IMG/VR virus record: IMGVR_UViG_3300031951_000003
Span: 186,001-250,000 of that record
DNA: 64,000 bases
Reading direction: 5' to 3' (one strand)
Part shown: positions 13,764 through 42,793 of the stretch, piece by piece
How the letters are laid out: each line of letters starts with the position of its first letter
How positions within the stretch are numbered: the stretch's first letter is position 1
Program-made: the position numbers and the translations under genes
Notes under the pieces: generated by a model
Told to the model about the DNA's origin: nothing
The model's input: only the letters and a program-made list of their open reading frames with translations
Databases searched by the model: none

Positions 13764-13790
13764 AAAAATCCCCACCTTGTGAGTGGGGAT
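13764..13790 (-). terminator. Intrinsic terminator, identical core to 13326
   Basis: aaaaatccccaccttgtgagtggggat. Confidence 0.75.
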
Positions 13791-13798
13791 TAGTTAGT

Positions 13799-14050: not shown

Positions 14051-14160
14051 ATTTTGGTAATTTACTTACCAATAAATATTTTTGTATTGACGAAGGACAA
14101 TCATTTAAATAAAAAATCCCCTCAAGATTTATGAAGGGATTACAATTACAATTTCTTATT

Positions 14161-14478: not shown

Positions 14479-14491
14479 GAAAAAATAAATA

Positions 14492-14842: not shown

Positions 14843-14859
14843 TAATTATAAATATTCAA

Positions 14860-15681: not shown

Positions 15682-15731
15682 AGTAAATTGATTTTATATC
15701 TATAAATATAATATAAAAAAATCAATTTTGA

Positions 15732-16196: not shown

Positions 16197-16207
16197 AAAA
16201 ATAAATA

Positions 16208-16534
16208 TTAGTCTAAACTACTGTTGATAACATTCCCGTCAGTTCCCACTACAACGAATCCGACCCTGTAATTTCGTGGGATATCAAAATAAGGAAGATA
16301 CTTCATCGTATGATAATCAACCAAATAATGGGGGTCTAATTCCCTCTGGTACATATTATCTTTTGTCATCTCTGAATCATTTACATAAATCCTTAATATC
16401 AATCTATTGATATCCCCAATCTCATAAACTTCAATATGGTCAATCATTGGATAGATACTCATAATGACAGATGAGTTCAATAACTTTGTTATTGGTTTGT
16501 TAATGTATTTTTCCAAAAATTGTTTATCCACCAT
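16208..16534 (-). CDS. Hypothetical protein
   Basis: ATAAATA upstream; IYPMIDHIEV resembles 31446. Confidence 0.55.
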   Translation of the reverse strand: MVDKQFLEKYINKPITKLLNSSVIMSIYPMIDHIEVYEIGDINRLILRIYVNDSEMTKDNMYQRELDPHYLVDYHTMKYLPYFDIPRNYRVGFVVVGTDGNVINSSLD

Positions 16535-16557
16535 ATAGAATAAATAGAAATAAAAAT

Positions 16558-16585
16558 AAAAAACCCCTCCTTGTGAGAGGGGTTT
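16558..16585 (-). terminator. Intrinsic terminator
   Basis: aaacccctccttgtgagaggggttt. Confidence 0.7.
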
Positions 16586-16588
16586 GTG

Positions 16589-16996
16589 TTAAAATCTTTT
16601 TTTTGTTCGAAGTTTTATTGGACCATCTTTTTGATATCTGTTCCAATAATCTCTTCCTGGTTTAGAAACATCCGAACCAATCCTGTCTTCTTGTCCGAAA
16701 CTCCATTTATTTCTCGGTACATCCCTTTGGGTAATGTTCTTATACATTTCAAAGTCATCTGGTCCAAACTCAATTTCTTCATCATAATCAAATTCTTCAG
16801 GGTCAACAGGTCTATCGTCTTCATCAAACCAACTGTCTCTGTGACCTAAAATACCCCTGTTTTCAGGTTTCATTTTCATGAAGTGTCTTTTAGGCATTTC
16901 AGTTCCCATATCCAACGAATCAAGTTCATGTTCTTTTAAAACTCTTTTAACCAATCTTATCAAATCAGATTCGGTCAATCTTACTATTTTTGACAT
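16589..16996 (-). CDS. Leader-B protein
   Basis: Start moved to 16996: MSKIVRLTESDLIRLVKRVLKE. Confidence 0.65.
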   Translation of the reverse strand: MSKIVRLTESDLIRLVKRVLKEHELDSLDMGTEMPKRHFMKMKPENRGILGHRDSWFDEDDRPVDPEEFDYDEEIEFGPDDFEMYKNITQRDVPRNKWSFGQEDRIGSDVSKPGRDYWNRYQKDGPIKLRTKKRF

Positions 16997-17078
16997 ATAA
17001 ATTATTTTATTATAAATACTATTTGAAATAAAAAAAAATCCCCTCACTTAGGAGGGGGGTTCTTAAAATTATGTTTGA

Positions 17079-17474
17079 CTACTTCCAACTATCCAAATTT
17101 AATGTCCTAATTTGAGAAATTATTTGGTCATTTATTTTGTTGTAAGAATTGAAATGATAAATTGAGTTATCAATTAAATTCATGAGAGCTTGTTTTCTTG
17201 GTTGTGGCATGTTCAGACCAGATACCTTATTTTTAAGGGATGCCAACTCAGTCATAACTTTGACATTCGGCTCATCTAATTTTTTTAATTTCTTAATCAG
17301 TCTATCGAGTCTTGACAAGTTCTGAAAATAATCCATTCCATATCCTCTTTTAACACCCTTAACACCTCTATAAAAATCACCCAATGCGTCGAACGGACCT
17401 TCGTTTGTTTCTTGTTCTTGTAAAACTTTCTTTACAATTCTATTTAAATCTGATTCAGTTAGTTTTTTTGCCAT
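17079..17474 (-). CDS. Leader-B helical protein
   Basis: MAKKLTESDLNRIVKKVLQEQ. Confidence 0.65.
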   Translation of the reverse strand: MAKKLTESDLNRIVKKVLQEQETNEGPFDALGDFYRGVKGVKRGYGMDYFQNLSRLDRLIKKLKKLDEPNVKVMTELASLKNKVSGLNMPQPRKQALMNLIDNSIYHFNSYNKINDQIISQIRTLNLDSWK

Positions 17475-19651: not shown

Positions 19652-20680
19652 TTAAACGTTATAAGTTGTATTTTGATTGTTCGGCGGATTGTTTTTTGCG
19701 TATGCATTAAATCTATTTAAAACATTTTGAATAGTTTGACCTGAATTCATAATACTCATCATTATCCAGAACGCGTTTACATCACCTGTATTAACTATTT
19801 TTACGAAGTCTTCCACCGTGATATCTTGACCAGGTTTTACCCCTATTATGTTTCTTATCCCATATAATCTTGATAAGATTTCAGTATCTTCATAGATATA
19901 TTCTTTTTTATTATTTCTCAACAATCGTAGGTAACTGTTTATTAGGTCGACAGGTTTTTTTATCCCCTGCGCTCTTAAATCATACGCGTATTTATACCAT
20001 TTATCTTTCTCGGCTTTAGTTAATTCTGACTTACGGGCTTCAGTTTCTGAACCGAAAAGGGACCCCAAACTTGTCCATATAGATTCTTTTTTGTTTCTAT
20101 CAATTTTCAAATCAACATCTATTTTTTGTTTAGGGTGGAATGGTTTCACATTATAAAGAATGTGTTGAATTTCATGAATTAAAATTCCGAGAGGGTCTTC
20201 GGTGTTGTTTGCACAATTAATATAAATAATCCCTTCAAAAGGGCTATAACCCATCACTGTATTTGGTCTAACGTGGGCAATTGAATCACTTCTCGGGTCT
20301 GAATAATATTGAAATCGCAAATCAGACAAAGCCTCGTTATAATCTTTGAATATCTCAGAGGCTTCGTTTGTAGAAATTTTCCAATTTTTTGCAAATTTAT
20401 TTAAAGTGACAGGACTTCTCAACCAATCTTTCCACCAATTTACCGCCTGACTTAATGTTGTTGTATTGTAACTCTTCATACAGTTGTCTCTTTCTTTTGC
20501 AAAATCCGCACGTCCTGCAATATTATTGTTTACATAAGTAGAACTTGCTGGTAAACGGGGTTGACCAAATTTCAAAGGTGGTATAGATGGGGTTGGTTTT
20601 TTTTGTTCGTCCAAATTATTGGATATTGCACCACCCATGAGTTCTTTAACTCGTGATATATTTTCATTCAAATTCATCAA
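19652..20680 (-). CDS. Leader-C protein with HEXXH metallopeptidase motif
   Basis: MNLNENISRVKELMG; ILIHEIQHILY; later EILSRL. Confidence 0.65.
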   Translation of the reverse strand: MMNLNENISRVKELMGGAISNNLDEQKKPTPSIPPLKFGQPRLPASSTYVNNNIAGRADFAKERDNCMKSYNTTTLSQAVNWWKDWLRSPVTLNKFAKNWKISTNEASEIFKDYNEALSDLRFQYYSDPRSDSIAHVRPNTVMGYSPFEGIIYINCANNTEDPLGILIHEIQHILYNVKPFHPKQKIDVDLKIDRNKKESIWTSLGSLFGSETEARKSELTKAEKDKWYKYAYDLRAQGIKKPVDLINSYLRLLRNNKKEYIYEDTEILSRLYGIRNIIGVKPGQDITVEDFVKIVNTGDVNAFWIMMSIMNSGQTIQNVLNRFNAYAKNNPPNNQNTTYNV

Positions 20681-20720
20681 TTATAAATATTACAACAATA
20701 AATTATGGCGGAATGAGATG

Positions 20721-21713
20721 TTATATCAAACGTTCGAATGAATTTTTTACCCTTTGTTTAAAAGAAGGGTTTTCCATATCAGGTGGAATTTGAAGTTCAC
20801 CGGAACCTATCGTAATTATACTTTTACCATCAGAGGGTAACCAAATACTTTTTTGGTGGGGCTTTATAAATTTTTCAATTTCAAAAATATCAGGTTCCTT
20901 GAAATTAATACAACCCTTACTCATTTTCCTTCTTTTACAACTCTGAGGGGAAAGGTCCGCGGTTGTTAAAGCATCTATTCTTGGTCTTTTTTTCGTTCCA
21001 TGAAATGCAGTTACAGTTTCGTTACCATCAAAGGTTTCAAATGACATGTATTTCTCTCCATAAGTTGCAATGTCTGATTGTCTCGCAATCTCATCTTCCA
21101 AAGTATCTTTGATTCCTGCAGTTCTTCTGAATATTCCAGCAGGGGTACTTTGTTCAGGCCATCTATCCTCTGTAGGAGCAAAACATTGCTCCATTCTCTT
21201 AACAAACCCTTCCATCCCTTCTTTTTTCAAATTTGCAACACTGTCCTTAAATTTATTCCAAACCTGTTTATAAAAATCTTGAACAACAAACTTGTCGCTT
21301 TGGTCCTCTTTACCTGTTAAAACCAAAAATGTTCTAACAAGTTCATATCCAGGATTGAATAGATAAATTCTGGCTTGAGAATCATCCAATATGGTAAATT
21401 TCTCATTTCCCATTATTTTATTTTTTCTGAGATAATCAACTTGGTCTTGAACTTGTTTGGATGCACTTGGTATTTTGTTAGTGAATAGTCGTTCAACCTT
21501 AGACTTTTCGGCAAACGCTTTACTAACAACAGACGGGTCTATCTTTTGGGGATACTTTCCGTCTTTTATTCGAGGGAAAACCCTCGAGGCTTCTACTGAA
21601 CCCATAGGTGATGACACGGGTCCACCTTGATTGAACAAACCTTCTTTTGTATAAAAAGGGGAAGTTTGTTCCAATAAAAAATTGTATTGTGATTCTGTGA
21701 TTAGATATTTCAT
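20721..21713 (-). CDS. Leader-A protein with L,D-transpeptidase (YkuD)-like domain
   Basis: MKYLITESQY; TPAGIF; AFHGT...MSKGCINF (H...C dyad). Confidence 0.6.
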   Translation of the reverse strand: MKYLITESQYNFLLEQTSPFYTKEGLFNQGGPVSSPMGSVEASRVFPRIKDGKYPQKIDPSVVSKAFAEKSKVERLFTNKIPSASKQVQDQVDYLRKNKIMGNEKFTILDDSQARIYLFNPGYELVRTFLVLTGKEDQSDKFVVQDFYKQVWNKFKDSVANLKKEGMEGFVKRMEQCFAPTEDRWPEQSTPAGIFRRTAGIKDTLEDEIARQSDIATYGEKYMSFETFDGNETVTAFHGTKKRPRIDALTTADLSPQSCKRRKMSKGCINFKEPDIFEIEKFIKPHQKSIWLPSDGKSIITIGSGELQIPPDMENPSFKQRVKNSFERLI

Positions 21714-21753
21714 CAACAATAAATATCACGACCCCATTGTCTGAGATTTAATT

Positions 21754-22368
21754 TTAAACTTTTGATATTGTTTGATTAAATTGGTCTGAATTAATTTGTT
21801 GAGAAATATAATTAGAAAGAAGTTGCTTGTATTTTTGTTCACCGAATTTTTGAATGTATCTATCTTTGTATTTGGTTATTGATGGTTCCACGGATTTTAA
21901 TAAACCTTCGATAGTTTTTAGTTCTGCTTGGATGACATTTTTATTTGTTGCAACCTTTTTCACCACTTGGACCTCAACTGGAGTTAATCTTGTTTTGGAA
22001 AGTAATTTTTCTGCCAACGCAACCGACCCTCTAACACCAACCTGATTTAGTTCAGGTATGAGACCCAAAAGTTTACCCGATAAAGGGATTAAAGAAAATA
22101 GAGTAATAATGGTTGCAGCTTTCTTATTTCCTTCTTGGAAATGTCTTGCAGCATCTCCAAGCCCAACCATAGATGATATAAATGGTCCAATAACAGGAAT
22201 TAGAACAGAAACAATACCCAAAAAAACATTCATGTCATGACTCGTCAAAGCTTTGTCCCAACCTTTTACAACGCTTTTTTGTTGACCTTGGGGAACATAA
22301 TTTCCCCAACCCGTCATGCTCTGTTCTGAAATTAATTTTAATTGTCTTTCAGTTATGATGTACTTCAT
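21754..22368 (-). CDS. Leader-A protein with hydrophobic helical hairpins (pre-toxin-like)
   Basis: MKYIITERQLKLISEQ; LIPVIGPFISSMVGLGDAA...EGNKKAA...LFSLIP. Confidence 0.6.
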   Translation of the reverse strand: MKYIITERQLKLISEQSMTGWGNYVPQGQQKSVVKGWDKALTSHDMNVFLGIVSVLIPVIGPFISSMVGLGDAARHFQEGNKKAATIITLFSLIPLSGKLLGLIPELNQVGVRGSVALAEKLLSKTRLTPVEVQVVKKVATNKNVIQAELKTIEGLLKSVEPSITKYKDRYIQKFGEQKYKQLLSNYISQQINSDQFNQTISKV

Positions 22369-22405
22369 AACAAATAAATATCACGACCCAATTATATGAG
22401 ATGGT

Positions 22406-22951
22406 CTATTTAAGGACATACACCCAAGCGTTTTGCTTGTAATTACCGAATTTTTTGAGTGCTGCGGTTGTTCTGTGCCAACCTTCCAATAAGTCATACT
22501 TTCCGTCCTTTGTTTCAACCACGATAATTGGTTCAGAAGACAAACCACCCTTTTCCAAATTAGATTGTTGAAAATCGTGTCTTTCGGTGTCTTTGGTAAT
22601 GTCAGTTCTTCTGAAACCTTCAATCTTTTTTCTCAAATCTTTCTGAACAAACTCTGTGAATGATTCCAACGACAAATCCAATATTTTATTTTCCCAATGA
22701 CCTTTACCGTGCCCTTCAACAAAACTAACGAGATAACTTCTCACAAGGTCTTTATATTCTTCAGGACTTTCATCTTTTATGTCTTTTGTGTTTCTATACA
22801 ACCAATCTCTTAAAACATATTCAGGCCAATCAATTCCCGTAATTTCTTTACTCTTATTTCTAAGATAATTCATATAACCTTCACGAGTTTCAACAATAAT
22901 CCCCATCAATTCTTTTACTCGTGATATATTTTCGTTCAAGTTCATCATCAA
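22406..22951 (-). CDS. Leader-C protein with ParB/Srx-like domain
   Basis: EPIIVVETKDGKYDLLEGWHRTTAA. Confidence 0.65.
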   Translation of the reverse strand: MMMNLNENISRVKELMGIIVETREGYMNYLRNKSKEITGIDWPEYVLRDWLYRNTKDIKDESPEEYKDLVRSYLVSFVEGHGKGHWENKILDLSLESFTEFVQKDLRKKIEGFRRTDITKDTERHDFQQSNLEKGGLSSEPIIVVETKDGKYDLLEGWHRTTAALKKFGNYKQNAWVYVLK

Positions 22952-22985
22952 TAAATATCACGACCCACTTGTCTGAGATGGTCAA

Positions 22986-23552
22986 CTAATTGAAAAGTCT
23001 TTGGATATTATCAACGTATGGAGAATTATTTGGCTCATTGACCCAAACATACGCTTTTAATGGCTTGTTTTTCATTTTTGCCAAGAAAACTCTATGAGCG
23101 CCGTCAACAACTTCATAACCCTTATCATTTTTTCTTAACGTTATTGGTGGGAGTTTACCAAAATTGACTTTCCTCGGGTCTGACGGGTTTTCTCTGAAAT
23201 ATTTATCTGATTTACCTGAAACATAGTCATCAAATTTTTGTTGTCTATCAATAACAAATTCATCTTCTAAATTAATTTCATTTGGGTCAACAAGTATCGG
23301 TCCCGTTAAAACCCAATCTTTGATTTCGTAAATTGTTCTTCTCCATTCTGCAAACGGTAACCCCATTTCATCATTATATTGATAGTCGATTATTTCCTTT
23401 TGTTCAGGAAACATTTTCAAAAGCAAATTATAAATCTCCTCAGATTTTTCTCGGGTAACAATTTTATTGACAAAGTCCCAATCAAATTCTTCAGATACCA
23501 AACCCATCAATTCTTTTACTCGTGATATATTCTCGTTCAGATTCATCAACAA
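22986..23552 (-). CDS. Leader-C protein with ParB/Srx-like domain
   Basis: PPITLRKNDKGYEVVDGAHRVFLA. Confidence 0.7.
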   Translation of the reverse strand: MLMNLNENISRVKELMGLVSEEFDWDFVNKIVTREKSEEIYNLLLKMFPEQKEIIDYQYNDEMGLPFAEWRRTIYEIKDWVLTGPILVDPNEINLEDEFVIDRQQKFDDYVSGKSDKYFRENPSDPRKVNFGKLPPITLRKNDKGYEVVDGAHRVFLAKMKNKPLKAYVWVNEPNNSPYVDNIQRLFN

Positions 23553-23573
23553 TAAATATCACGACCAATTTGT

Positions 23574-24470
23574 TTAAGATGGTGTCTGAACAATGTCTTT
23601 GAACTTGTCCAAATACACAGTTCTTTCAGAATCAACATTTATTAGTTGTGTGTTAGGTGATAAATAATTATCCTTCACTTTAATATAATACTGACCGTCA
23701 TCTACTATACCGAGTTTTGAAATAAACTCATCAATAAACTTTTTGTTCGAGGTCGACTTCGACAACAAACCTTCCAACCCTTTCTTGGTCAAAATTGTGG
23801 AAGGGTCTCCTGTCTTTTCTGATGGTCTTTCTTTCGTGGCTTCATACTTTCCCAAATATTGTTCCAAAACCATTTCAATATCTCGGCTGTCGTATTTAAA
23901 GTTGGGGTCTGTTTTTGCTATTTCATTTCTCTTAGAAACATTTTCCACCAATAGATAAATTGGGGTATGTAATAGAATTTCTTTGAAGGTTACATTCGGT
24001 AAATATTTTTGCAATTGGTTGTCGACAGTATCCACAAATATCTTTTTCCAAGGCCCTGTTTTGATTTCTTGAGCGACATACCATAATCTTGCGTCAGTTC
24101 CCTTAAGATATTCCTTTTCGAATGGATTTTCAGGAACAGTATCACCATTTTCACGATAAATACCCGAAACAATTCCAGCATCTTCTCTTTCTTTTGCCCA
24201 CTGTCTTATATTTGGATGGTCCAATTTAAGTCTTCTTTCCTCACCTTCTCTCCCTTCTTCACCCGTCCCACTAAAATCATCAGAAGCAATCACAACCCAT
24301 TGATTTGGGTCCTTGGATTCATAATAAGGAACAGCATTCATTTGTTTCAACAAATAAGATTTACCCGCAGAAGAAGTTCCATCCAATAAGACTACCGATT
24401 TATCATCAGCTTGTTCAACCAGCAATCCCATCACTTCCTTAATTCTTTTTATATTTTCGTGTAAATTCAT
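23574..24470 (-). CDS. Leader-C protein with P-loop kinase domain (chloramphenicol phosphotransferase-like)
   Basis: VVLLDGTSSAGKS Walker A; IFVDTV. Confidence 0.65.
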   Translation of the reverse strand: MNLHENIKRIKEVMGLLVEQADDKSVVLLDGTSSAGKSYLLKQMNAVPYYESKDPNQWVVIASDDFSGTGEEGREGEERRLKLDHPNIRQWAKEREDAGIVSGIYRENGDTVPENPFEKEYLKGTDARLWYVAQEIKTGPWKKIFVDTVDNQLQKYLPNVTFKEILLHTPIYLLVENVSKRNEIAKTDPNFKYDSRDIEMVLEQYLGKYEATKERPSEKTGDPSTILTKKGLEGLLSKSTSNKKFIDEFISKLGIVDDGQYYIKVKDNYLSPNTQLINVDSERTVYLDKFKDIVQTPS

Positions 24471-26599: not shown

Positions 26600-26656
26600 C
26601 ACAAATAAAAAACCCCTCTGTATGAAGTAGGGGTTTAATAAGTATAATTGTTTTTA

Positions 26657-27307
26657 CTATGCCAACATTGTTTGAACATCTTTGATTTGTGTATTGAAGT
26701 CATCAATATAAGGTTTCAACTCTTTTGATTTATTTGATAAAGCTGCGAGTTTGCTTGAGACAATAGCGAGAGCATCTGCGGCTTTTGATTTGAATATTTT
26801 TACAAGAGCAATCATGAAGGAATATTTCCAAGGTTCTTTTGCTAAGTTGAAACCTGCAGATTTTATTATACCCATGTTTTTCATAATCACACGAAGTTCA
26901 AACGGTGTCTTTTTTAATAAAGATTTTACTTCCACTCTCGCAGCAATGTTTGAGGCATTACCTCCAACAGGAATTAGTGACGAAGCAAATGTAACAACCG
27001 CCAATAAAGACATTTCAATTTTTTCTTCAGTTGTCTTTGCAAAGAAATACCTAACAACATATGTGAGAGCATGTGTAACATCAATACCAATTGATATTAG
27101 ATTACCAATTCCTGGTACAGCATCAACCAAACCTGAAACAATATCAGCATAATCATCAGCATCCAAATTTGGACCCAACTTACCCAATTTATTCTGAGCT
27201 GCGACTTGATTATCAACCTTCTTTAATTCACGTCTTTCGTAATCTGTTGAATAACCTTGTTCCATCATGATGGTCTTCAATTGAGATTCTGTGATAATGT
27301 ATTTCAT
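26657..27307 (-). CDS. Leader-A protein with hydrophobic helical hairpins
   Basis: MKYIITESQLKTIMMEQ; DAVPGIGNLISIGID...FASSLIPVGG; related to 21754. Confidence 0.65.
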   Translation of the reverse strand: MKYIITESQLKTIMMEQGYSTDYERRELKKVDNQVAAQNKLGKLGPNLDADDYADIVSGLVDAVPGIGNLISIGIDVTHALTYVVRYFFAKTTEEKIEMSLLAVVTFASSLIPVGGNASNIAARVEVKSLLKKTPFELRVIMKNMGIIKSAGFNLAKEPWKYSFMIALVKIFKSKAADALAIVSSKLAALSNKSKELKPYIDDFNTQIKDVQTMLA

Positions 27308-27384
27308 ATTACAATAAATACTTTGGGAAATAAAAAACCCCCTTCGTGAATGAAGAGGGTCTTGTTATAGAAATTATTTTTTTT

Positions 27385-27858
27385 TTAAATCCCAATACAA
27401 CTTAACAATGCTTTTACATCTTTCGCTGGGTCAGAACCTAAACCACCTTGGTCTTCAGGTAATCCTGTTAAAAAGATTACAATTAGTGAAGATAATGCCA
27501 ACACACCTCCAGCAACCAATCCAACAGGGTTTGCAATTAACATAGCAACGATTCCAAGAGCATAAGCTCCAGCACTTGTAGTTAAAAACATTAAACTTGT
27601 GAGTTGTTTTGATGTGATACATTTTTTGATTTTTTCCTGTATTTTAGGGTCAGGTTTTGCACCACTTTCAAATTTTTGTATTGCCGCATCAATCATTGAT
27701 TGTGCTTCAGCTGATTCGGTCAAATATGGTTTTACATCACCTTGTTTAGTTTCAACCAATTGTTTGAACTTCTCGTTGTAAACTCTCATTCCACCTTTAT
27801 GTTGTTCACGGATGGCGTTTTTTTCTTCTTCAGAAATATTGTTTAAAATGTGTTTCAT
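27385..27858 (-). CDS. Leader-E protein with C-terminal TM hairpin
   Basis: MKHILNNISEEEKNAIREQH; two long hydrophobic helices. Confidence 0.65.
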   Translation of the reverse strand: MKHILNNISEEEKNAIREQHKGGMRVYNEKFKQLVETKQGDVKPYLTESAEAQSMIDAAIQKFESGAKPDPKIQEKIKKCITSKQLTSLMFLTTSAGAYALGIVAMLIANPVGLVAGGVLALSSLIVIFLTGLPEDQGGLGSDPAKDVKALLSCIGI

Positions 27859-27942
27859 AATTTTAATTTTATTATAAATATATTCGGAAATAAAAAACCC
27901 CCTTCGTAATTGAAGAGGGTCTTGTTATTTTGAAATGTTTTA

Positions 27943-28449
27943 TTAGAGCGGACCATATTTTCTCATTCTTCTTGATGCTTGTCTACATTCCTTACTCGTT
28001 CTTGTGTTGCCACCAATCAATTTGATTAGTTTAACAACCAACATTAAAATGATAATACCTGCAAACACCTGAATGAAAACAACAGGGATTGCCATTGCAC
28101 CAATTGTTACAATCTCTCCCACTTGTTCACTTTGAGTTTTTCTTTTGAAAATTGATTTAACCTTTTTGATTAACTCCTTAACATCTTTGGCTGAAGTCAG
28201 ACCATCGATTTGTTCTTTGATTTTCTGAAGCATTGTCTTTTGTTTCTCATCCGCAGTTGGAGGAGTTTCAAGTGGACAATCGTTCAACGCAAATTCAATA
28301 TCTTCAGTCGATACGGGTTCTTCCCCAACTGTTGATAGTTCATTATTAATCACGTCAAGAACTTGAGATTCATCTTCTTTCAATAATCTCTTTTCCAATC
28401 TGATGTTGGCTTCTTGTATGTGTCTGATTTTACTATAACTTCTATTCAT
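27943..28449 (-). CDS. Leader-D protein with C-terminal TM helix
   Basis: MNRSYSKIRHIQEANIRLEKRLLKE. Confidence 0.65.
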   Translation of the reverse strand: MNRSYSKIRHIQEANIRLEKRLLKEDESQVLDVINNELSTVGEEPVSTEDIEFALNDCPLETPPTADEKQKTMLQKIKEQIDGLTSAKDVKELIKKVKSIFKRKTQSEQVGEIVTIGAMAIPVVFIQVFAGIIILMLVVKLIKLIGGNTRTSKECRQASRRMRKYGPL

Positions 28450-28550
28450 AATTTGATTTTATAATAAATACAAAATTTTCCCAAAAATTTTTAAATGAAA
28501 AAACCCCCTTCGAAATTGAAGAGGGTCTTGTTCTATAATTCACAATGATG

Positions 28551-28850
28551 TTATTCATCAAACATTGATTCCAATTCTTTAACAACCTCCTTTGCATAAT
28601 CAATAATCTCATCGGCTTGTTCATCAGTCAAATCGTCGTCTTGATAAGCCTCATGCATTATTTTATAAATTTCATTAATACATCTTTCAACCTCATCCAA
28701 ATCCTCCTCCTCATCCATTGCGTGATTTGCAACCATATCAATTACTTTAAAATAATCTTCAGTAGGGTCATCCTCTCTTCTTTGTTCCTTTACTATCTTA
28801 TTAACCAATCTTGTTAAGTCAGATTCTGTGAGTTTTACTATCTTTTTCAT
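28551..28850 (-). CDS. Leader-B protein with highly acidic payload
   Basis: Start moved to 28850: MKKIVKLTESDLTRLVNKIVKEQ; DEEEDLDEVE, DDDLTDEQADE. Confidence 0.65.
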   Translation of the reverse strand: MKKIVKLTESDLTRLVNKIVKEQRREDDPTEDYFKVIDMVANHAMDEEEDLDEVERCINEIYKIMHEAYQDDDLTDEQADEIIDYAKEVVKELESMFDE

Positions 28851-28940
28851 ATGAAATAAATATCCCAAAAATTTTAAAATGAAAAAACCCCCTTCGTAAT
28901 TGAAGAGGGTTTTGTTCTATAAATTAAGATTATTAGTATC

Positions 28941-29381
28941 TTACAAACTTTGTATCAATTTGAATACTTGACCCCTATTCATATTTTCAGTTTTAATTAA
29001 TTTGGGTTTCTCGTCCCCAACCCTTGTATAATATTCAACTTTGTATGGTCCATTAATGTCTTTTAGTCCACTAAAATATATTTTTTTGAATTCATAATTA
29101 GGGTGATTATTTTTACTCAATTGTATAAAATCCCCTTCATCATCCGAAAAATTTTCAACTTTGTTGTTTCCTTTTGCCATACTAATAAGGTTCTCGGTAT
29201 AGATATTTAGTTTCTGTTTTTTTACATTATTATATCCCTTTTCTCTAAGTATATTTTTAATTTTATTTAAAAAACCACCATATATATCATTTTCACCATC
29301 AGTCTTTGTATTTTGTTCTTTAATAACTTTATTAACCAAACGAATCAAATCGTTTTCTGTTAATCTTATAATCTTTGACAT
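28941..29381 (-). CDS. Leader-B protein, paralogue of 30815
   Basis: MSKIIRLTENDL; shared GPY/FxVEY(Y/F)...KxIKTE C-terminal motif. Confidence 0.65.
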   Translation of the reverse strand: MSKIIRLTENDLIRLVNKVIKEQNTKTDGENDIYGGFLNKIKNILREKGYNNVKKQKLNIYTENLISMAKGNNKVENFSDDEGDFIQLSKNNHPNYEFKKIYFSGLKDINGPYKVEYYTRVGDEKPKLIKTENMNRGQVFKLIQSL

Positions 29382-29491
29382 AGAATTTATTTTCCAATAA
29401 ATATACCAAAAAAGGAGAATTTTTTCCCAAAAATTTTAAAATAAAAAACCCCCTTCTTTTCAGAAGAGGGTCTTGTTTTAAAAAAATATAA

Positions 29492-30007
29492 TTAAATTAA
29501 AGAGAGCTTAATTTTTACACCATTACCCGCGTCAATAGTTGCACTTTTTCCTTGATTACCAGCCAAAGATTGTAATCCCGCATTTAGTTTGTCTTGAGGT
29601 ACTCTAAATTTCATCCATCCATCGGAGGTCAGAGCGTCGGTAGGAATTAATTCTTTCATGATTTTTTTCATAGCATTACCTGATGGTTGAGCTTCTCCCA
29701 GTAATGTTCCTTGTCTGTCTCTTCTAACATTTCTCAAAATTACATTAAAAGGCACGTTAGGTAAAAATGAACCTGGGTCATACACCCCTTTTACACTGTA
29801 TTTGTAAGTTGTGTTTGGAATGTTCTGTCCTTTGTTGTCTCTTTGTGAAAGATAAATTGTACCAGTTCCGTCGCTTGAAGCATTAACCAAAGCTGGAGTT
29901 GCAAGAACAGTTAACAAAGGAACTTGAGCCATAGGTGCTTGTTCTTTTATAACTCTCTTAACCAAATTCAACAAGTCGGATTCAGTTAATTTTATAATTT
30001 TCGACAT
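29492..30007 (-). CDS. Leader-B beta-rich protein
   Basis: MSKIIKLTESDLLNLVKRVIKEQ. Confidence 0.65.
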   Translation of the reverse strand: MSKIIKLTESDLLNLVKRVIKEQAPMAQVPLLTVLATPALVNASSDGTGTIYLSQRDNKGQNIPNTTYKYSVKGVYDPGSFLPNVPFNVILRNVRRDRQGTLLGEAQPSGNAMKKIMKELIPTDALTSDGWMKFRVPQDKLNAGLQSLAGNQGKSATIDAGNGVKIKLSLI

Positions 30008-30110
30008 ATAACTTATTTTACTATAAATAGACCCAAAAAGGACAATTTTTTCCCAAAAAATTTTTTTAAGAAAAAACCCCCTTCGTAATTGAAGAGGGTC
30101 TTATTTCAGA

Positions 30111-30407
30111 TTAACTTTGACCGAATCGTCTGTAGTATCTTATTTCATAATATCTTTTATCCTTACAATCTATTCTTGTTCTAGAACCATACTCATATGA
30201 GGGAATACAAAAACCTGATTTAATATTTTTTATTAGTTCTTCAGTTGATTTAACCGCATTAGGGTCTGATTTTATTGTTTGAGGAGTTGATTGTTCAGAA
30301 AGATTGTGCATACCAAATCTACTTTCAGGTTGTTCCTTCAATAATCTTTTTTCCAACATTAAATTTGATTCCTGAATATGTCTTATTTTACTGAAACTTC
30401 TATTCAT
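30111..30407 (-). CDS. Leader-D protein
   Basis: Start moved to 30407: MNRSFSKIRHIQESNLMLEKRLLKEQ. Confidence 0.65.
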   Translation of the reverse strand: MNRSFSKIRHIQESNLMLEKRLLKEQPESRFGMHNLSEQSTPQTIKSDPNAVKSTEELIKNIKSGFCIPSYEYGSRTRIDCKDKRYYEIRYYRRFGQS

Positions 30408-30462
30408 AAAATATGTTTCCAATAAATACTCCCAAAAATTTTTTTCTCAGTTGAAGGATAAA

Positions 30463-30714
30463 TTAAATCAAATGGTCGTGTTTTAGAAAAAGAATATAAC
30501 CTTCAATATCTCTCAATACTTGGTTTACATTCCTACCCGACAAATGATAAAACCCATGTTTACTTTTTTTGATTGTTATAAGTTCCCCATTTGAAAAATA
30601 TATTCTTTTCGGTGACCTTCTAACAACCGAGACCTTATTACTCCCATTCATATAATGGTCCCCAACATTACAATCCAAAATAAACTGATGTGATTTTATC
30701 CATAAATTTTCCAT
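30463..30714 (-). CDS. Hypothetical protein under a host-type promoter
   Basis: No leader; sigma-A promoter at 30719-30750. Confidence 0.55.
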   Translation of the reverse strand: MENLWIKSHQFILDCNVGDHYMNGSNKVSVVRRSPKRIYFSNGELITIKKSKHGFYHLSGRNVNQVLRDIEGYILFLKHDHLI

Positions 30715-30718
30715 AACA

Positions 30719-30750
30719 CAAAAATAAGAAATGTTCTTTTTTTTCCCAAA
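30719..30750 (-). promoter_or_regulatory. Bacteroidota sigma-A promoter
   Basis: Minus strand TTTG-N20-TATTTTTG. Confidence 0.7.
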
Positions 30751-30814
30751 AATTTCAAATTAAAAAACCCCCTTCGTTTCGGAAGAGGGTCATGTTTATA
30801 GTTAAATTTCTTTA

Positions 30815-31198
30815 TTACCCAAAGTTTTGGAGAAGTTGCCCAATTTTATATCCATCCAATTTTTCTGTTTTGATTTTTTTTCCACCTTTAAAATATTCTA
30901 CAACGAAAGGTCCGAACATACTATAGTTATTCAAATAAATTATTGTAGATTCTGGACTTGTCCCCGTGTCACTTAAAATCAATTTTTTTTGACCTCCTTC
31001 ATCATAAAAATCAACCGTGTAAGGTCTCTTGTACATTGATAAAAGTGAATAATTGCTTTTAATAAGTTTGAATCCTTTCTTTAAAAAATCTTTTTTTACC
31101 ATTTGTAAAAAAGATTCTAAAGTCTCTGATTGTTCTTGAATTACTCTTTTCGCCAAACGAACCAAATCTTGTTCTGTAAGTTTTATAACTTTTGACAT
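30815..31198 (-). CDS. Leader-B protein
   Basis: Start moved to 31198: MSKVIKLTEQDLVRLAKRVIQEQ. Confidence 0.65.
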   Translation of the reverse strand: MSKVIKLTEQDLVRLAKRVIQEQSETLESFLQMVKKDFLKKGFKLIKSNYSLLSMYKRPYTVDFYDEGGQKKLILSDTGTSPESTIIYLNNYSMFGPFVVEYFKGGKKIKTEKLDGYKIGQLLQNFG

Positions 31199-31308
31199 AT
31201 AAATAATTTTATTATAAATATACCGAAAAAGGACAATTTTTCCCAAAAATTTTTTTTGCGTTATTCAAGGTATTATCCCCCCCAAAACTGACATTTTGAC
31301 CTACATAA

Positions 31309-31369
31309 GGGGGGATACGGGGGGAGGGGGGCCCCCATAGGGGGGTATGCCCCCATGCCGAAGGGGGGT
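31309..31369 (+). other. G-tract cluster, potential G-quadruplex/hairpin
   Basis: Five G6 runs at about 31309, 31319, 31326, 31340 and 31363, interleaved with C5 runs. Confidence 0.6.
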
Positions 31370-31371
31370 GT

Positions 31372-31430
31372 TGTGGATAAATAGTTATTCCCACCCCCTA
31401 TACATTTATCAACAGATAGGATGTGGAAAA
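31372..31430. promoter_or_regulatory. DnaA-box-like cluster 1
   Basis: TGTGGATAA (perfect, 31372-31380), TTATCAACA (31406-31414), TGTGGAAAA (31422-31430). Confidence 0.55.
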
Positions 31431-31445
31431 GTTAATTTGGTTTTG

Positions 31446-33589: not shown

Positions 33590-33690
33590 ATGTAATCACC
33601 ATCTCATCTGTCCCCTCACTGAGTGGGGGGAACTTATGGGTGGGGGAAAAGTCAAGTTCATATACTGTGTAGTCTTACTTTTTTATGTAA

Positions 33691-33712
33691 AAGTAAAGTT
33701 ATAACTTTACTT
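33691..33712. promoter_or_regulatory. 22-bp perfect palindrome, probable operator
   Basis: AAGTAAAGTTATAACTTTACTT, 21 bp upstream of ATG 33734. Confidence 0.6.
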
Positions 33713-33733
33713 AAATGGGTGATACTTATTACT

Positions 33734-34192
33734 ATGATATACTTTATAGAAAATTTAGAAACCAAACACATTAAAATTGGTTTCACTACAGATATTAAAA
33801 ATAGACTAAGTAACTTACAGACATCTTCACCATATGAGTTAAAAGTGTTAGCGGTTTGTGAAGGAAATGATAAAACCGAAAAAGAATTACATATTAAATT
33901 TAACGATTACCATACCAGAGGAGAGTGGTTTAATCCTAATAAAGAATTGATTGACTATATCAGTCAGTTCCCCCCATATAAGTCAGATAACAAACAACAC
34001 GGTAATTTAGCTAGTCTAAGAAAACAGAAGAAGATGAGTATGGAAGAAGTTGGTAAAAAAATGAAGATAAGTAAACAAGCTGTTTCAGATATCGAAAAGA
34101 GATACGAATATGGTAATATAACAATCAAAAACCTTAGGTCATATCTTGATGCTATTGGTTATGATGTTACTATAGTTTTCTCGCCGAAATAA
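33734..34192 (+). CDS. T5orf172 (GIY-YIG-like) domain fused to XRE-family HTH
   Basis: MIYFIE...IKIGFT...RLSNLQTSSPYEL...EKELH..F.....RGEWF; LASLRKQKKMSMEEVGKKMKISKQAVSDIE. Confidence 0.8.
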   Translation: MIYFIENLETKHIKIGFTTDIKNRLSNLQTSSPYELKVLAVCEGNDKTEKELHIKFNDYHTRGEWFNPNKELIDYISQFPPYKSDNKQHGNLASLRKQKKMSMEEVGKKMKISKQAVSDIEKRYEYGNITIKNLRSYLDAIGYDVTIVFSPK

Positions 34193-34285
34193 GATTATAC
34201 AACAAGTGAGTGAATGAAGGACACTCCCGAACCTTTAGGTGAGGGATGTATTGTGTCCGTAGTGAATGAACTTGTTGTATAATCT
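34192..34285. repeat. Structured element copy 1 (nested hairpin)
   Basis: 16-bp perfect outer stem AGATTATACAACAAGT/ACTTGTTGTATAATCT; inner GGACAC/GTGTCC, TCCC/GGGA and ACC-ttta-GGT. Confidence 0.8.
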
Positions 34286-35036
34286 AAACTTGATAAACTT
34301 CATATGAGATAGGGATAGATAGTGATTGTTTGATGTTATCAATCATGCCCGTTCTTTGTTTAACATTTCCCCATGTAATGAAGAAAAGACCATTTTCTAA
34401 CTGAATGAAGCTATTTCTGTTCATTTTTTTTGGGTCTGAAGTCATAGACGAAGGGAGTTCATCTTTTGTCTTTTTGAAGTAATTGGGTAACTTGGTAAGT
34501 AAAACTTCAGGTGAGAAATTGGTTGAGAGATACTGACCAAGAAGAACATATCTATCAATAGTTGTATCCGCGACAAATTCAGTATTATCAATAAAGATTT
34601 TGATTGAAGACCTGACTTTTTTGATATTTTCTAAAATCTCAATTTTTTGAGTTTGAGTGGTCCCTGAATCTGAGACAATTGATTCAGTTAAATCAAGTTC
34701 AAGTGTTTCGGGAAAATAATTGGTAAGTTTAGTAATTTTTTTGTGTAATAAATCCTCATCATCACAATCAAACCATTCAGTGGTAATACTTTTTCTATCG
34801 TTATATTCTTTAGTAACTCTATATTCTTCGAAACATGCGTGGAGGGCCTTTTCTAAGGAACTCATGTGATTAGTTTGGAATATACGTATAAACACAACGT
34901 CCACAGGCATGTGTGTAGAATTTAACGCGGTTTCTCGGGATTTATAATCTATGGACCGACCTAACTTATAATAATTCGTTATAAAATTACCAAGATGGTC
35001 AACCATTCTTCCAATGTAACAATAACCTTGACTCAT
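34284..35036 (-). CDS. T5orf172 (GIY-YIG-like) nuclease with C-terminal putative DNA-binding domain
   Basis: GYCYIG...YYKLGRS...RETALNST...LEKALH...TEWF. Confidence 0.75.
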   Translation of the reverse strand: MSQGYCYIGRMVDHLGNFITNYYKLGRSIDYKSRETALNSTHMPVDVVFIRIFQTNHMSSLEKALHACFEEYRVTKEYNDRKSITTEWFDCDDEDLLHKKITKLTNYFPETLELDLTESIVSDSGTTQTQKIEILENIKKVRSSIKIFIDNTEFVADTTIDRYVLLGQYLSTNFSPEVLLTKLPNYFKKTKDELPSSMTSDPKKMNRNSFIQLENGLFFITWGNVKQRTGMIDNIKQSLSIPISYEVYQV

Positions 35037-41003: not shown

Positions 41004-41588
41004 TCAGAATGGATAATCATAGTTTAACATACTACAGTAGTCTTGAGAACAGGAAAAAATAATATCTTTGATTTCCTGAGTGAAATATTTGTCAACGTCA
41101 TTTATGACATCGGTATCATTATCTTTAATAGAACATAAATTTCTAATTTGAACTAATTTATCGAAATCGGAATTTGCTATGAAAGGTATTTTATTGTAAT
41201 CATCATAAAGATTTTCGATTCTGATAAAATAATCCGGAGTCCTTTCCTTAAATGGCCAAATTATACATCTCAATGTTGTTTTAGGAAAGTTCATATAAAA
41301 ATAGTTCTGAAAACTTTCAGGACTCCAAATATTCGGATTTTTGTGATTAAATTTATAAAAAGATAAAATTCTTGAAAATGGATTTCGAGCCGTAGATAAA
41401 AAAATATAATCTTTGTGTCCGCTTGGATAATCGAAGGAATGGTTATTGTTTAACGGGATTACTTTCAAACCATCAGGCGTTTTTTTGTAAGTTGAAAATC
41501 CGTAGTTTTTCAAAACTTTTACACAATGAACCGAACCTGTTCTAGCTTGTAACCAAACAAATGATTTATTAATTTCTGATATGTTCAT
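41004..41588 (-). CDS. Sulfotransferase family 2-like protein
   Basis: [28 protein letters not shown]. Confidence 0.7.
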
Positions 41589-42793
41589 ACGAAAACTTTG
41601 GGTATTTCATCCCAAGATGTGGTATACTTTTGGGACATGAAATCTTGTCTCATCTCCCACTCTTTTTTTTTGTTTATGGGTGCCTGAACTAACTGTATTG
41701 AAGTTGTAAATAAAGTGGGTTGTTCTATATTCTCGGGCATAAGTTCATTAAATATAATTCCACATTTTTTATAATTCTTACTTGAGTTATAAATTTTCTT
41801 TAAGTGTGGATATACCTGGCTCCATATTTCATCCACATCTCTTGTTTGTTTTTGAAATGTAATCTGTTTACTCGAGTAATGTTTTTCACCTTTATGAACA
41901 TTTCCACTTAAAAATATGGTTGCTCGGTTTGGTGATATTTCATTATCAATAAGTTTTTTCACCCCGTTTTTAATATATGTATACATGGCCTCAGATAATT
42001 GATTAAAATCATTTACGTCTTGTCCGAATGACCTTGTTGATGCTATGTTCTTTTTTAACTTTGGTAATGGTTTTACAGGATGACAATACATACCAAGAAG
42101 TTCACACTTTGTTCTAAGTCCATTTACATTCATCATTTTTCTGACAATACTATCAGACATCATAACAAATTGACCAACACTCTCAACTCCTAAGTTTTTT
42201 AATTTTTTATTCCACTGTCTACCAATACCCCAAACCTCATCTACAGATATTGTGTAAAGTGATTCCCTAAAATCATGCAAACTCCAATATGAACAAACAC
42301 CATCGTATGATTGTTGTTGTTTGGCTATATGTGATGTAAGTTTGGCTAATGTCTTATTTGGACCGACACCTATTGAAACAGGAACTCCTGTAAGTCTTTT
42401 AACCTCATTACGAATAAGATGTAATCTATCTAAAAGTTCATCATCGGGTATATTAGAAAAATCCACAAAACACTCATCAATAGAATAGACCTCAACTTCT
42501 TTAGCATACTTCTTTATGGTTGTCATGACTCTGTCTGACATATCTCCATACAAGTTATAGTTTGATGAATAAACACAGAATCTATGTTCTTCCATGAAGT
42601 CTTTTTTCATAAAGAAAGGTTCACCCATTTTGATTCCAAGGGCTTTGGCTTCTTGAGAGCGGGCAATAACACAACCATCGTTGTTAGATAAAACAACTGT
42701 AGGTCTCCCAATGGAGATTGGATTGAAAACTCTTTCACAACTAACGTAAAAATTGTTACAATCTACAATACCGATTTTTTTATTGGACTGCAT
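41585..42793 (-). CDS. umuC: Y-family DNA polymerase V catalytic subunit
   Basis: [42 protein letters not shown]-terminal [16 protein letters not shown]. Confidence 0.93.

What the first reader, a model, noticed from the sequence alone, without database searches (positions are those of the whole stretch)
26600..31255. Cassette array 2: terminator-promoter-leader-payload units repeated seven times
Seen: seven near-identical ~35-bp terminator hairpins, most preceded by CCCAAAAATTTT and adjoining the TATTTAT of the next gene. Eight of the nine ORFs carry leaders (A, B, D, E). The one leaderless ORF (30463) has a host sigma-A promoter built from the repeat's own TTTG. 28941 and 30815 are paralogues. 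Inference: each gene is an autonomous monocistronic module, and the shared ~60-80 bp junction is a recombination substrate. The repeat differs from that of array 1, suggesting independent cassette lineages.
Basis: partly seen in the sequence, partly recalled or inferred. Interest (0 to 1): 0.72.

Follow-up and report, generated by a model that had tools for sequence, protein, structure and literature searches.

The report
Phage gene cassettes with address tags
A 321-kb T4-like phage from lakes carries a fast-shuffling row of small late genes, each with its own promoter and terminator, and most begin with an interchangeable short peptide that probably loads the protein into the phage head.

Summary
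Seven copies of one 28-30-nt intrinsic terminator hairpin lie at window 27333-30790. They are the only copies in the 321-kb genome. Each sits between a stop codon and the TATTTAT motif of the next minus-strand gene.

The genome is a T4-superfamily jumbo phage, with a Gp23 capsid protein and a Peptidase_S77 prohead protease. Its host is probably a Bacteroidota bacterium. TATTTAT is its genome-wide promoter motif, most likely late: it stands upstream of 103 of 388 genes, including tail and head genes.

Relatives carry different gene sets at this locus. One cassette indel leaves a single chimeric junction, as described for T4 PeSL elements. Other differences are microhomology deletions.

Eight of the nine proteins start with 17-25-aa leaders under purifying selection. 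The leaders are swapped between orthologous payloads exactly after a conserved (I/L/V)-x-E-Q. That motif matches the T4-type protease cleavage motif, which is also conserved at this phage's capsid maturation site. Leader A heads at least 8,813 protein clusters and co-occurs with the protease.

Best reading: a hyperplastic late-gene region whose leaders are capsid-targeting propeptides, as in T4 internal proteins. Packaging and cleavage are inferred, not shown.

The parts
31199..31445 (-). Conserved G/C-tract intergenic element ahead of the array, ending in AAATTTTTGGGA (31241-31249) and the TATTTAT of cassette 1
   Evidence: It is the densest G/C-run cluster in the genome. It is conserved in five relatives far better than the flanking protein.
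30815..31198 (-). Cassette 1: 127-aa protein with leader A (MSKVIKLTEQDLVRLAKRVIQEQ); paralogue of 28941
30715..30814 (-). Junction: hairpin 30763-30790, TTTTTGGGA 30744-30752, and a host-type promoter TTTG-N20-TATTTTTG at 30719-30750
30463..30714 (-). Cassette 2: 83-aa protein with no leader and no TATTTAT; host-type promoter; no terminator after it
30408..30462 (-). Junction without a hairpin: TTTTTGGGA 30430-30438, TATTTAT 30422-30428
30111..30407 (-). Cassette 3: 98-aa protein with leader B (MNRSFSKIRHIQESNLMLEKRLLKEQ), followed by a remnant of a D-type leader (..FGMHNLSEQ)
30008..30110 (-). Junction: hairpin 30072-30099, TTTTTGGGA 30051-30059, TATTTAT 30023-30029
29492..30007 (-). Cassette 4: 171-aa protein with leader A, a disordered linker and a globular alpha/beta payload; its homologues carry leaders A, B or D
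29382..29491 (-). Junction: hairpin 29444-29471, TTTTTGGGA 29425-29433, TATTTAT 29397-29403
28941..29381 (-). Cassette 5: 146-aa protein with leader A; truncated by a ~190-nt deletion in L011 and L012; absent in L013 and L048
28851..28940 (-). Junction: hairpin 28883-28910, TTTTTGGGA 28863-28871, TATTTAT 28856-28862
28551..28850 (-). Cassette 6: 99-aa acidic protein with leader A; fused to the next payload in L013 (256 aa)
28450..28550 (-). Junction: hairpin 28499-28526, TTTTTGGGA 28479-28487, TATTTAT 28464-28470
27943..28449 (-). Cassette 7: 168-aa protein with leader B and a C-terminal hydrophobic segment
27859..27942 (-). Junction: hairpin 27893-27920, TATTTAT 27874-27880, no TTTTTGGGA
27385..27858 (-). 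Cassette 8: 157-aa protein with leader MKHILNNISEEEKNAIREQ and a hydrophobic C-terminal part; absent in L013, where one chimeric junction remains
27308..27384 (-). Junction: hairpin 27333-27360, TATTTAT 27314-27320
26657..27307 (-). Cassette 9: 216-aa protein with leader MKYIITESQLKTIMMEQ; 100% identical in L013, whose neighbouring genes are 70-85% identical
26603..26640 (-). Closing terminator with a different sequence (CCCCTACTTCATACAGAGGGGTTTTTT)

Best explanation
Window 26,600-31,255 is a hyperplastic late-gene region of a 321-kb T4-superfamily phage that probably infects a freshwater Bacteroidota bacterium.

The array holds nine small minus-strand genes. Eight are preceded by TATTTAT, the phage's own single-element promoter motif, most likely late. 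Eight are followed by an intrinsic terminator, and seven of those terminators are copies of one hairpin. The one gene with no terminator after it is also the one that lacks TATTTAT.

The junction (stop, hairpin, U-tract, optional AAATTTTTGGGA, TATTTAT) works as a portable regulatory cassette. Because it is repeated, it is also a substrate for homologous recombination that inserts, deletes and swaps genes. This parallels the PeSL elements of T4-type phages, but with a TATTTAT (probably late) promoter instead of a sigma-70 early one. Microhomology deletions add further variation.

Eight of the nine proteins begin with one of four interchangeable 17-25-aa amphipathic leaders that end in (I/L/V/M)-x-E, usually followed by Q. 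The most likely function of these leaders is capsid targeting. On this reading they dock the diverse payloads into the prohead core, the phage's T4-type prohead protease cuts them off after the Glu, and the mature payloads are ejected into the host with the DNA, like T4 IPI-III and Alt.

Shown:
- the anatomy of the array
- that TATTTAT is a genome-wide upstream motif (its late timing is inferred from the kinds of genes it precedes)
- plasticity among relatives
- one chimeric junction
- leader modularity and purifying selection on the leader
- presence of the protease, and conservation of its motif at the capsid maturation site

Inferred:
- packaging into the head
- cleavage of the leader
- ejection into the host
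- what the payloads do
For: Phage type.
- Peptidase_S77 is present (E 1.5e-22), as is a Gp23 capsid protein (E 4.6e-62).
- The nearest cultured capsids are Flavobacterium phage immuto, Microcystis phage Mel-JY01 and RM378.

Promoter.
- TATTTAT lies within 40 nt upstream of 103 of 388 genes, a 25.7-fold enrichment.
- It precedes the genes for tail sheath, tail fibre, protease, scaffold and portal. It is absent at the genes for DNA polymerase, SbcC and an AAA protease.
- It also precedes the terminase, portal and tail-fibre genes in cultured phage immuto.

Terminators. All are strand-specific. dG is -15 to -19.5 kcal/mol and each has a U6 tail.

Plasticity.
- Six or more arrangements occur at the same locus.
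- L013 has one chimeric junction where the window has two junctions flanking the 157-aa gene. This is the topology described for PeSLs (PMC2839356).

Leaders.
- 35 genes carry them, and 27 of those lie in a 43-kb zone.
- Only 1 of 181 within-family pairs has homologous payloads.
- For leader A, pN/pS is 0.28 with pS 0.62, so the peptide is the selected unit.
- One payload family carries leaders A, B or D, with the swap point exactly after EQ. A second swap is seen in the 341-aa protein.
- Glu22 is invariant and P3 is I/L/V in 16 of 16 sequences.
- 35 of 35 leader proteins have [LIVM]xE at residues 12-28, against 118 of 353 other proteins.
- 28 of 35 leader genes have TATTTAT, against 76 of 353 others (p 6.5e-12).
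- Leader-A proteins flank the capsid gene.
- Seven of nine payloads are basic.

Protease motif. The capsid protein's I-N-E|A aligns with the T4 gp23 L-T-E65|A66 maturation site.

Co-occurrence. 9 of 10 large IMG/VR contigs with leader A encode Peptidase_S77, including all 5 that are at least 90% complete.

T4 precedent. In T4, diverse internal proteins share only a 10-19-aa N-terminal capsid targeting sequence that gp21 removes (PMC9026906 and PMC3012670).
Against: - There is no virion proteome, no N-terminal mapping and no cleavage assay.
- The protease-leader complex prediction gave no answer.
- P1' is Gln in most leaders but Ala at the capsid site.
- Three payloads have hydrophobic, membrane-like segments. 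As far as I know this is not typical of T4 internal proteins.
- Payloads are not significantly depleted in [LI]xE (p 0.18).
- Cultured relatives with the same protease lack leader A. The tag is therefore clade-specific, and its co-occurrence with the protease could simply reflect shared ancestry.
- A gp55-type late sigma factor was found only as a weak match (E 0.002) with no PHROG support.
- Between near-identical strains the indels are microhomology deletions in coding sequence, not junction exchanges.
- Five IMG/VR genomes are identical over the array.
- RNA evidence is limited to two low-depth contigs.
Confidence: 0.55

Rival explanations
1. The cassette architecture is as described, but the leaders are not capsid-targeting propeptides. 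They are a shared docking helix for some other common partner: a chaperone, the phage's AAA+ protease (as a degron), the membrane, or a scaffold for a non-capsid assembly. On this reading the (I/L/V)-x-E-Q ending is simply part of that helix.
For: - The leader is predicted as an amphipathic helix tethered by a disordered linker.
- It also occurs internally in fused proteins, so it does not need a free N-terminus.
- The genome encodes a 671-aa ATP-dependent protease-like protein.
- Three payloads have membrane-like segments.
- Relatives with the same S77 protease lack the leader.
- The complex prediction was uninformative.
Against: - The conserved Glu with I/L/V at P3 matches the T4-type cleavage motif, which is conserved at this phage's capsid maturation site.
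- The genes carry the TATTTAT motif also found upstream of structural genes.
- Leader-A genes sit next to the capsid gene.
- Internal copies are equally expected if polyproteins are cut by the prohead protease.
- T4 offers a direct precedent.
Confidence: 0.27
2. The repeats are leftovers of tandem duplication, kept similar by selection for strong expression signals. They have no special role in recombination, and the gene-content differences among relatives come from ordinary illegitimate deletions and insertions.
For: - 28941 and 30815 are paralogues.
- Strain-level differences are microhomology deletions in coding sequence: a 9-nt overlap in L011 and 1-3 nt in L011/L012.
- L048 lost the hairpin by a short-homology deletion.
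- Five IMG/VR genomes are identical over the array.
Against: - Payloads are unrelated in all but one pair.
- The 157-aa cassette indel leaves one chimeric junction: its 5' part and loop match the upstream junction and its 3' part matches the downstream one.
- The 146-aa cassette indel has its endpoints in the repeated promoter and leader region.
- All seven hairpins share the same U-G wobble, while leader synonymous sites are near saturation. This points to copying or conversion of the junction.
- The same hairpin occurs in other phage contigs in other contexts.
Confidence: 0.12
3. The array is an integron-like, site-specific cassette system in which the hairpin serves as an attC-like recombination site.
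For: The array consists of short genes separated by an imperfect-palindrome repeat.
Against: - None of the window proteins scanned against Pfam matched an integrase or tyrosine recombinase. Other window ORFs were not scanned.
- Each gene has its own promoter, unlike promoterless integron cassettes.
- The hairpin is a canonical terminator with a U-tract in gene sense.
- Crossover points vary in position.
Confidence: 0.02

Closest known systems
PeSL (promoter-early stem-loop) regulatory cassettes in the hyperplastic regions of T4-type phages (Arbiol et al. 2010, PMC2839356; Comeau et al. 2014, PMC4122927)
   Same: Both are composite promoter plus stem-loop terminator motifs repeated in the intergenic sites of a hyperplastic region of a T4-superfamily genome. 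Both stand immediately upstream of ORFans. In both, an ORFan flanked by two elements in one genome is replaced by a single chimeric element in a relative.
   Different: The promoter here is the phage's own TATTTAT motif, which stands upstream of structural genes. It is not a host sigma-70-like early promoter. The stem-loop lies upstream of the promoter, and seven copies are nearly identical and confined to one 3.5-kb stretch. Most flanked genes also share peptide leaders, so exchange points extend into the coding sequence. Mini-circles were not tested.
T4 internal proteins IPI, IPII and IPIII and Alt, with their capsid targeting sequence (CTS), and the polymorphic IP loci of T-even phages (Mullaney and Black 1996; Repoila et al. 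1994; reviewed in PMC9026906 and PMC3012670)
   Same: Both are diverse, mostly small and basic, otherwise unrelated proteins. Within a leader family the members share only a short N-terminal propeptide ending in (L/I)-x-E. Both occur in a phage with a gp21-type protease. In both, gene content varies between related phages.
   Different: There is no sequence similarity to the T4 CTS. The leaders are longer (17-25 aa) and fall into at least four interchangeable families. There are about 35 tagged genes per genome, against a handful in T4. Internal leader copies occur, and some payloads have hydrophobic segments. Packaging and cleavage are untested.
Propeptide-bearing ejection and inner-body proteins of phiKZ, 201phi2-1 and SPN3US giant phages
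   Same: In both, many paralogous or diverse head-internal proteins are processed at x-x-E motifs by a T4-related prohead protease, and cleavage sites are redundant.
   Different: The lineage is different (phiKZ-like versus Gp23-type). The cleavage motif there is S/A-X-E. No repeated promoter-terminator cassettes or interchangeable short leaders have been described there, as far as I found.
Integron gene cassettes
   Same: Both are arrays of short genes separated by a repeated imperfect palindrome, with variable content.
   Different: No integrase was found among the window proteins scanned. Every gene here has its own promoter and terminator. Exchange is by homologous or illegitimate recombination.

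Membership tests
PeSL-type mobile regulatory cassette | Composite motif of a promoter plus a stable stem-loop, in an intergenic position | tested here: met
   Hairpin plus TATTTAT occur in seven junctions.
PeSL-type mobile regulatory cassette | The promoter is a host sigma-70-like early promoter | tested here: not met
   Sigma-70-type matches are not above the shuffle expectation (37 against 33.9). The motif is TATTTAT, which also precedes structural genes. Only the 83-aa gene has a host-type (Bacteroidota) promoter.
PeSL-type mobile regulatory cassette | Concentrated in hyperplastic regions, upstream of ORFans, in a T4-superfamily genome | tested here: met
   Gp23 and Peptidase_S77 are present. 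No array protein matches any protein family. The locus varies among relatives.
PeSL-type mobile regulatory cassette | Indels bounded by the elements, leaving a single chimeric element | tested here: met
   Seen for the 157-aa cassette, window against L013. Seen partly for the 146-aa cassette. Other indels are microhomology deletions.
PeSL-type mobile regulatory cassette | Excised mini-circles; measured promoter and terminator activity | not testable with these tools
   This needs PCR or long reads and reporter assays.
T4-type capsid targeting sequence / internal head protein | The phage encodes a gp21-type prohead protease | tested here: met
   PF03420 matches at E 1.5e-22. It is also present in 9 of 10 large leader-A contigs.
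T4-type capsid targeting sequence / internal head protein | A short N-terminal propeptide shared by otherwise unrelated proteins | tested here: met
   35 genes carry leaders, and payloads are homologous in only 1 of 181 within-family pairs. Leaders are swapped on orthologous payloads.
T4-type capsid targeting sequence / internal head protein | The propeptide ends at the protease motif (L/I)-x-E | tested here: met
   Glu22 is invariant and P3 is I/L/V in 16 of 16 sequences. 35 of 35 leader proteins have the motif, against 118 of 353 others. The motif is conserved at the capsid maturation site.
T4-type capsid targeting sequence / internal head protein | Sequence homology to the T4 CTS or to IP proteins | tested here: not met
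   No Pfam, PHROG or NCBIfam family matches. The leader was not found in cultured phages.
T4-type capsid targeting sequence / internal head protein | The protein is present in the head, its leader is removed, and it is ejected into the host | not testable with these tools
   No isolate or proteome exists. The complex prediction gave no answer.
Integron | An integrase and promoterless cassettes with attC sites | tested here: not met
   Each gene has its own promoter. No integrase or recombinase family matched among the window proteins scanned against Pfam; other window ORFs were not scanned.

The most novel reading that the evidence does not exclude
The leader families (A, B, the MKYIITESQL type, the MNLxENIxRIKELMG type and the SE-EK-N-I type) form a general, undescribed address-tag system. 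On this reading, a clade of environmental T4-like jumbo phages uses it to load a very large and rapidly exchanged arsenal of proteins into the capsid for injection. For leader A alone this arsenal covers at least 8,800 clusters at 50% identity. The tags are interchangeable, travel together with a late promoter and terminator as one mobile unit, and also occur internally, giving polyproteins that the prohead protease would cut apart.
Probability: 0.35. Interest if true: 0.8.

Novelty: new variant of a known kind. Interest (0 to 1): 0.62.

Why it matters
T4 biology offers two classic ideas. One is that repeated promoter-terminator cassettes drive gene shuffling in hyperplastic regions. The other is that a short capsid-targeting peptide lets the phage pack arbitrary proteins for injection. 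Both rest on a few enterobacterial and vibrio phages.

This locus suggests that both operate together, and on a much larger scale, in uncultured freshwater jumbo phages:
- about a tenth of the genes are tagged
- the tags are interchangeable
- leader A alone heads thousands of unrelated protein clusters that no database names

If the leaders are confirmed, they would mark candidate injected proteins directly from sequence. Such proteins are likely to act in host takeover or counter-defence. The leaders would also be a ready-made tag for packaging cargo into such phages.

Tried and rejected
Searches that found nothing useful:
- DNA similarity to cultured phages: none.
- tblastn of the leader against cultured phages: none.
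- The leader-A profile is absent from Flavobacterium phage immuto and Microcystis phage Mel-JY01. In the 484-kb uncultured phage LR756508 it gave only an 18.6-bit match (E 0.0012) that did not recur at E <= 0.001.
- Pfam, PHROGs, NCBIfam and PADLOC on all array proteins: nothing above the family cut-offs.
- Pfam on ten other leader proteins: nothing.
- Rfam and tRNA scans of the window: nothing.
- Literature search for the leader motifs: nothing relevant.

Structure and feature searches:
- The AlphaFold model of the 171-aa protein gave a confident payload domain, but Foldseek found no PDB match at E <= 0.001.
- ESM Atlas searches of the 216-aa and 83-aa proteins gave only weak leads. One was the Pre-toxin TG domain at score 0.84.
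- The protease-leader complex prediction returned 'no answer' and is not used as evidence.

Other checks:
- The T4 gp55 late sigma factor gave only a 15.5-bit match, and PHROGs did not confirm it.
- AAATTTTTGGGA as a fixed -33 element is rejected. Its distance to TATTTAT varies from 1 to 24 nt. Its role remains unexplained.
- Depletion of cleavage motifs in the payloads is not significant.
- Metagenome contigs break at every junction, as expected for repeats. Their 'joints' and depth holes were not used as proof of rearrangement.

Full report
**What the sequence shows.** All genes of the region lie on the minus strand.
- Reading in gene sense, each intergenic junction has this layout: stop codon, about 20 nt, the hairpin GACCCTCTTC-N6-GAAGGGGG, a U6 tract, in five cases AAATTTTTGGGA (sometimes duplicated), then TATTTAT, 5-15 nt, and ATG.
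- The 28-nt hairpin core occurs seven times without mismatch, at plus-strand coordinates 27333, 27893, 28499, 28883, 29444, 30072 and 30763.
- It occurs nowhere else in the 321,139-bp genome to which the window belongs.
- The hairpins fold at -14.8 to -19.5 kcal/mol, with z-scores of -3 to -6.
- All seven share a U-G wobble that would be an A-C mismatch on the other strand.
- The terminator scan finds them on the minus strand only.
- A ninth junction (30408-30462) has no hairpin.
- The array is closed by a terminator of a different sequence at 26603-26640.

**What genome this is.**
- The record is a complete virus genome with direct terminal repeats.
- It encodes a T4-type prohead protease (Peptidase_S77, E 1.5e-22) and a Gp23-type major capsid protein (E 4.6e-62).
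- It also encodes a tail sheath, a tail fibre, a DNA polymerase and an SbcC-like nuclease.
- The closest cultured capsid proteins are those of Flavobacterium phage immuto, Microcystis phage Mel-JY01 and Rhodothermus phage RM378, at 37-43% identity.
- Bacteroidota-type promoters (TTTG-N17-23-TAnnTTTG) are about 8-fold enriched upstream of starts.
- Some proteins have signal peptides of the kind I recall as typical of Flavobacteria (this comparison rests on my own knowledge).
- The phage is abundant in lake metagenomes.
- Taken together, it is a distant T4-superfamily jumbo phage, probably of a freshwater Bacteroidota host.

**The promoter motif.**
- TATTTAT is not special to the array. It lies within 40 nt upstream of 103 of 388 predicted genes, a 25.7-fold enrichment.
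- Its spacing to the ATG is bimodal, at 4-6 nt and 12-17 nt.
- It precedes the genes for protease, scaffold, portal, tail sheath and tail fibre.
- It is missing at the genes for DNA polymerase, SbcC-like nuclease and an AAA+ protease.
- In the cultured relative immuto, 8 of 9 copies in the head module stand just upstream of coding sequences, including terminase and portal.
- I therefore read it as the lineage's late promoter.
- It is the reverse complement of the core of the T4 late promoter TATAAATA (T4 motif from my own knowledge). Whether that means anything is open.
- A gp55-like late sigma factor was not convincingly found.

**The junction as a recombination substrate.** Near-identical genomes from several lakes are either identical over the array or differ by two deletions inside coding sequence that have 1-9 nt of microhomology. 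More distant relatives differ in whole cassettes:
- L013 has 169 | 256 | 216 aa where the window has nine genes.
- L048 has a new 240-aa leader-A gene and lacks the 146-aa gene.
- L051, L062 and L064/L057 have other sets between the same anchor genes.
- L047 places the 171-aa payload beside homologues of genes that lie 17 kb away in the window.

- For the 157-aa cassette, L013 keeps one junction. Its 5' flank and loop match the window's upstream junction and its 3' flank matches the downstream one. The crossover therefore lies in the shared 3' stem and T-tract.
- This is exactly the topology described for PeSL-mediated excision in RB49 and phi1.
- The 146-aa cassette indel has its endpoints in the repeated promoter and leader region.
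- L048 lost the hairpin through a short-homology deletion.
- L013's 216-aa protein is 100% identical to the window's, while its neighbours are 70-85% identical. This indicates recent mosaic exchange.
- So homologous exchange at junctions is real, but it is one of several processes.

**The leaders.**
- Thirty-five genes, 27 of them within 43 kb, start with one of a few leader families.
- Only 1 of 181 within-family pairs has related payloads.
- Leader A copies differ at 62% of synonymous sites but only 18% of non-synonymous sites. The peptide is therefore under selection, and the DNA is not simply being homogenised.
- Homologues of the 171-aa payload carry leader A, B or D, and the switch falls exactly after '...EQ'.
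- The 341-aa protein swaps leader E for leader C in L013.
- The 98-aa protein has leader B in front of a remnant of leader D.
- In the AlphaFold model the leader is a low-confidence helix joined by a disordered linker to a confident globular domain.
- The leader-A profile finds 8,813 cluster representatives at E <= 0.001 among 1.84 billion proteins. Most matches start at residue 1. Some are internal or doubled, which points to fused modules.
- None of the leader proteins examined carries a name, and a text search for the motifs found no literature.

**Why capsid targeting is the best reading.**
- T4 internal proteins share only a 10-19-aa N-terminal capsid targeting sequence that gp21 removes at (L/I)-x-E. 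Their genes vary between T-even phages.
- The protease is present in this phage.
- The capsid protein's I-N-E|A aligns with the T4 gp23 L-T-E65|A66 site.
- Leader A has an invariant Glu with I/L/V at P3.
- All 35 leader proteins have [LIVM]-x-E at residues 12-28, against 33% of other proteins. The copies are related, so that p-value overstates independence.
- Leader genes are strongly associated with the late promoter: 28 of 35 against 76 of 353.
- Two leader-A genes flank the capsid gene.
- Relatives attach leaders to peptidoglycan-binding and lysozyme domains.
- 9 of 10 large leader-A contigs encode the protease.

None of this shows packaging or cleavage. The complex prediction was uninformative. 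P1' is Gln rather than Ala. Some payloads look membrane-active. Cultured relatives with the protease lack the tag. I put the composite explanation at 0.55. The architecture and plasticity part is near certain. The capsid-targeting part is about even odds.

**Transcription.**
- One metatranscriptome holds two perfect contigs, each inside a single gene (27395-27659 and 28954-29365). None spans a junction.
- This is compatible with monocistronic messages.
- It is weak evidence: depth is low, DNA carry-over is possible, and assemblers break at repeats.

**Verdict.**
- The finding is real.
- It is best filed as a new variant of two known T4 themes, PeSL-like regulatory cassettes and CTS-tagged internal proteins. 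Here they are combined and greatly expanded in an uncultured phage clade.
- The payload functions remain unknown.

Noticed in passing
window 31199-31445 (minus strand): The intergenic element ahead of the array has the densest G/C-run cluster in the genome: 9 runs of at least 5 G or C within 118 nt. It has its own TATTTAT, GC hairpins and a 10-bp long-range stem. It is nearly invariant in five relatives whose flanking protein is only 39-57% identical. No Rfam family matches and there is no covariation. It could be a late structured RNA or a DNA site.
   Followed up: partly
window 19652-24470: A second array of six genes has MNLNENISRVKELMG or MKYIITE.Q leaders. The genes are separated by only 27-43 nt that carry GGGTCGTGATATTTATTG, and there are no terminators between them. 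Here the promoter and leader modules exist without the hairpin.
   Followed up: partly
window 13297-17080: Array 1 has a different terminator family (CCCCACTCACAAGGTGGGG and variants) but the same TATTTAT motif and the same leader A.
   Followed up: partly
genome 100272-100742 (+) and 102702-103283 (-), outside the window: Two leader-A proteins flank the major capsid gene (103335-105146). The 232-aa protein between portal and protease ranks 3rd of 295 proteins in [LI]xE density, as expected for a degradable prohead core protein.
   Followed up: partly
window 30111-30407: The 98-aa protein carries leader B followed by the tail of a D-type leader (..FGMHNLSEQ). Its homologue in L064 has the full D-type leader. 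This is a nested leader replacement.
   Followed up: yes
junctions at window 28479, 28863, 29425, 30051, 30430, 30744, 31241: AAATTTTTGGGA is almost unique to this array (7 of the 8 genome copies). It lies at a variable distance (1-24 nt) from TATTTAT and is sometimes duplicated as AATTGTCCTTTTTGGG. Its function is unexplained.
   Followed up: partly
window 33623-35036: Two T5orf172/MUG113 (GIY-YIG-like) genes lie about 2.5 kb upstream of the array. L011 appears to have a different arrangement there from L012 and the window.
   Followed up: no
whole genome: TATTTAT often lies only 4-6 nt from the ATG (52 genes). If transcription starts a few nucleotides downstream of the motif, these messages would be leaderless or nearly so.
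   Followed up: no
window 41585-42793, 59334-60701, 45800-49297: The window also encodes a Y-family polymerase (IMS), a UvrC-like nuclease, a UDP-galactopyranose mutase and a family-2 glycosyltransferase.
   Followed up: no
L053, L056, L059, L063 (IMG/VR contigs): The same hairpin sequence follows a leader-E gene next to DNA-methyltransferase-like genes in other phage contigs. The terminator is therefore shared beyond this locus.
   Followed up: partly
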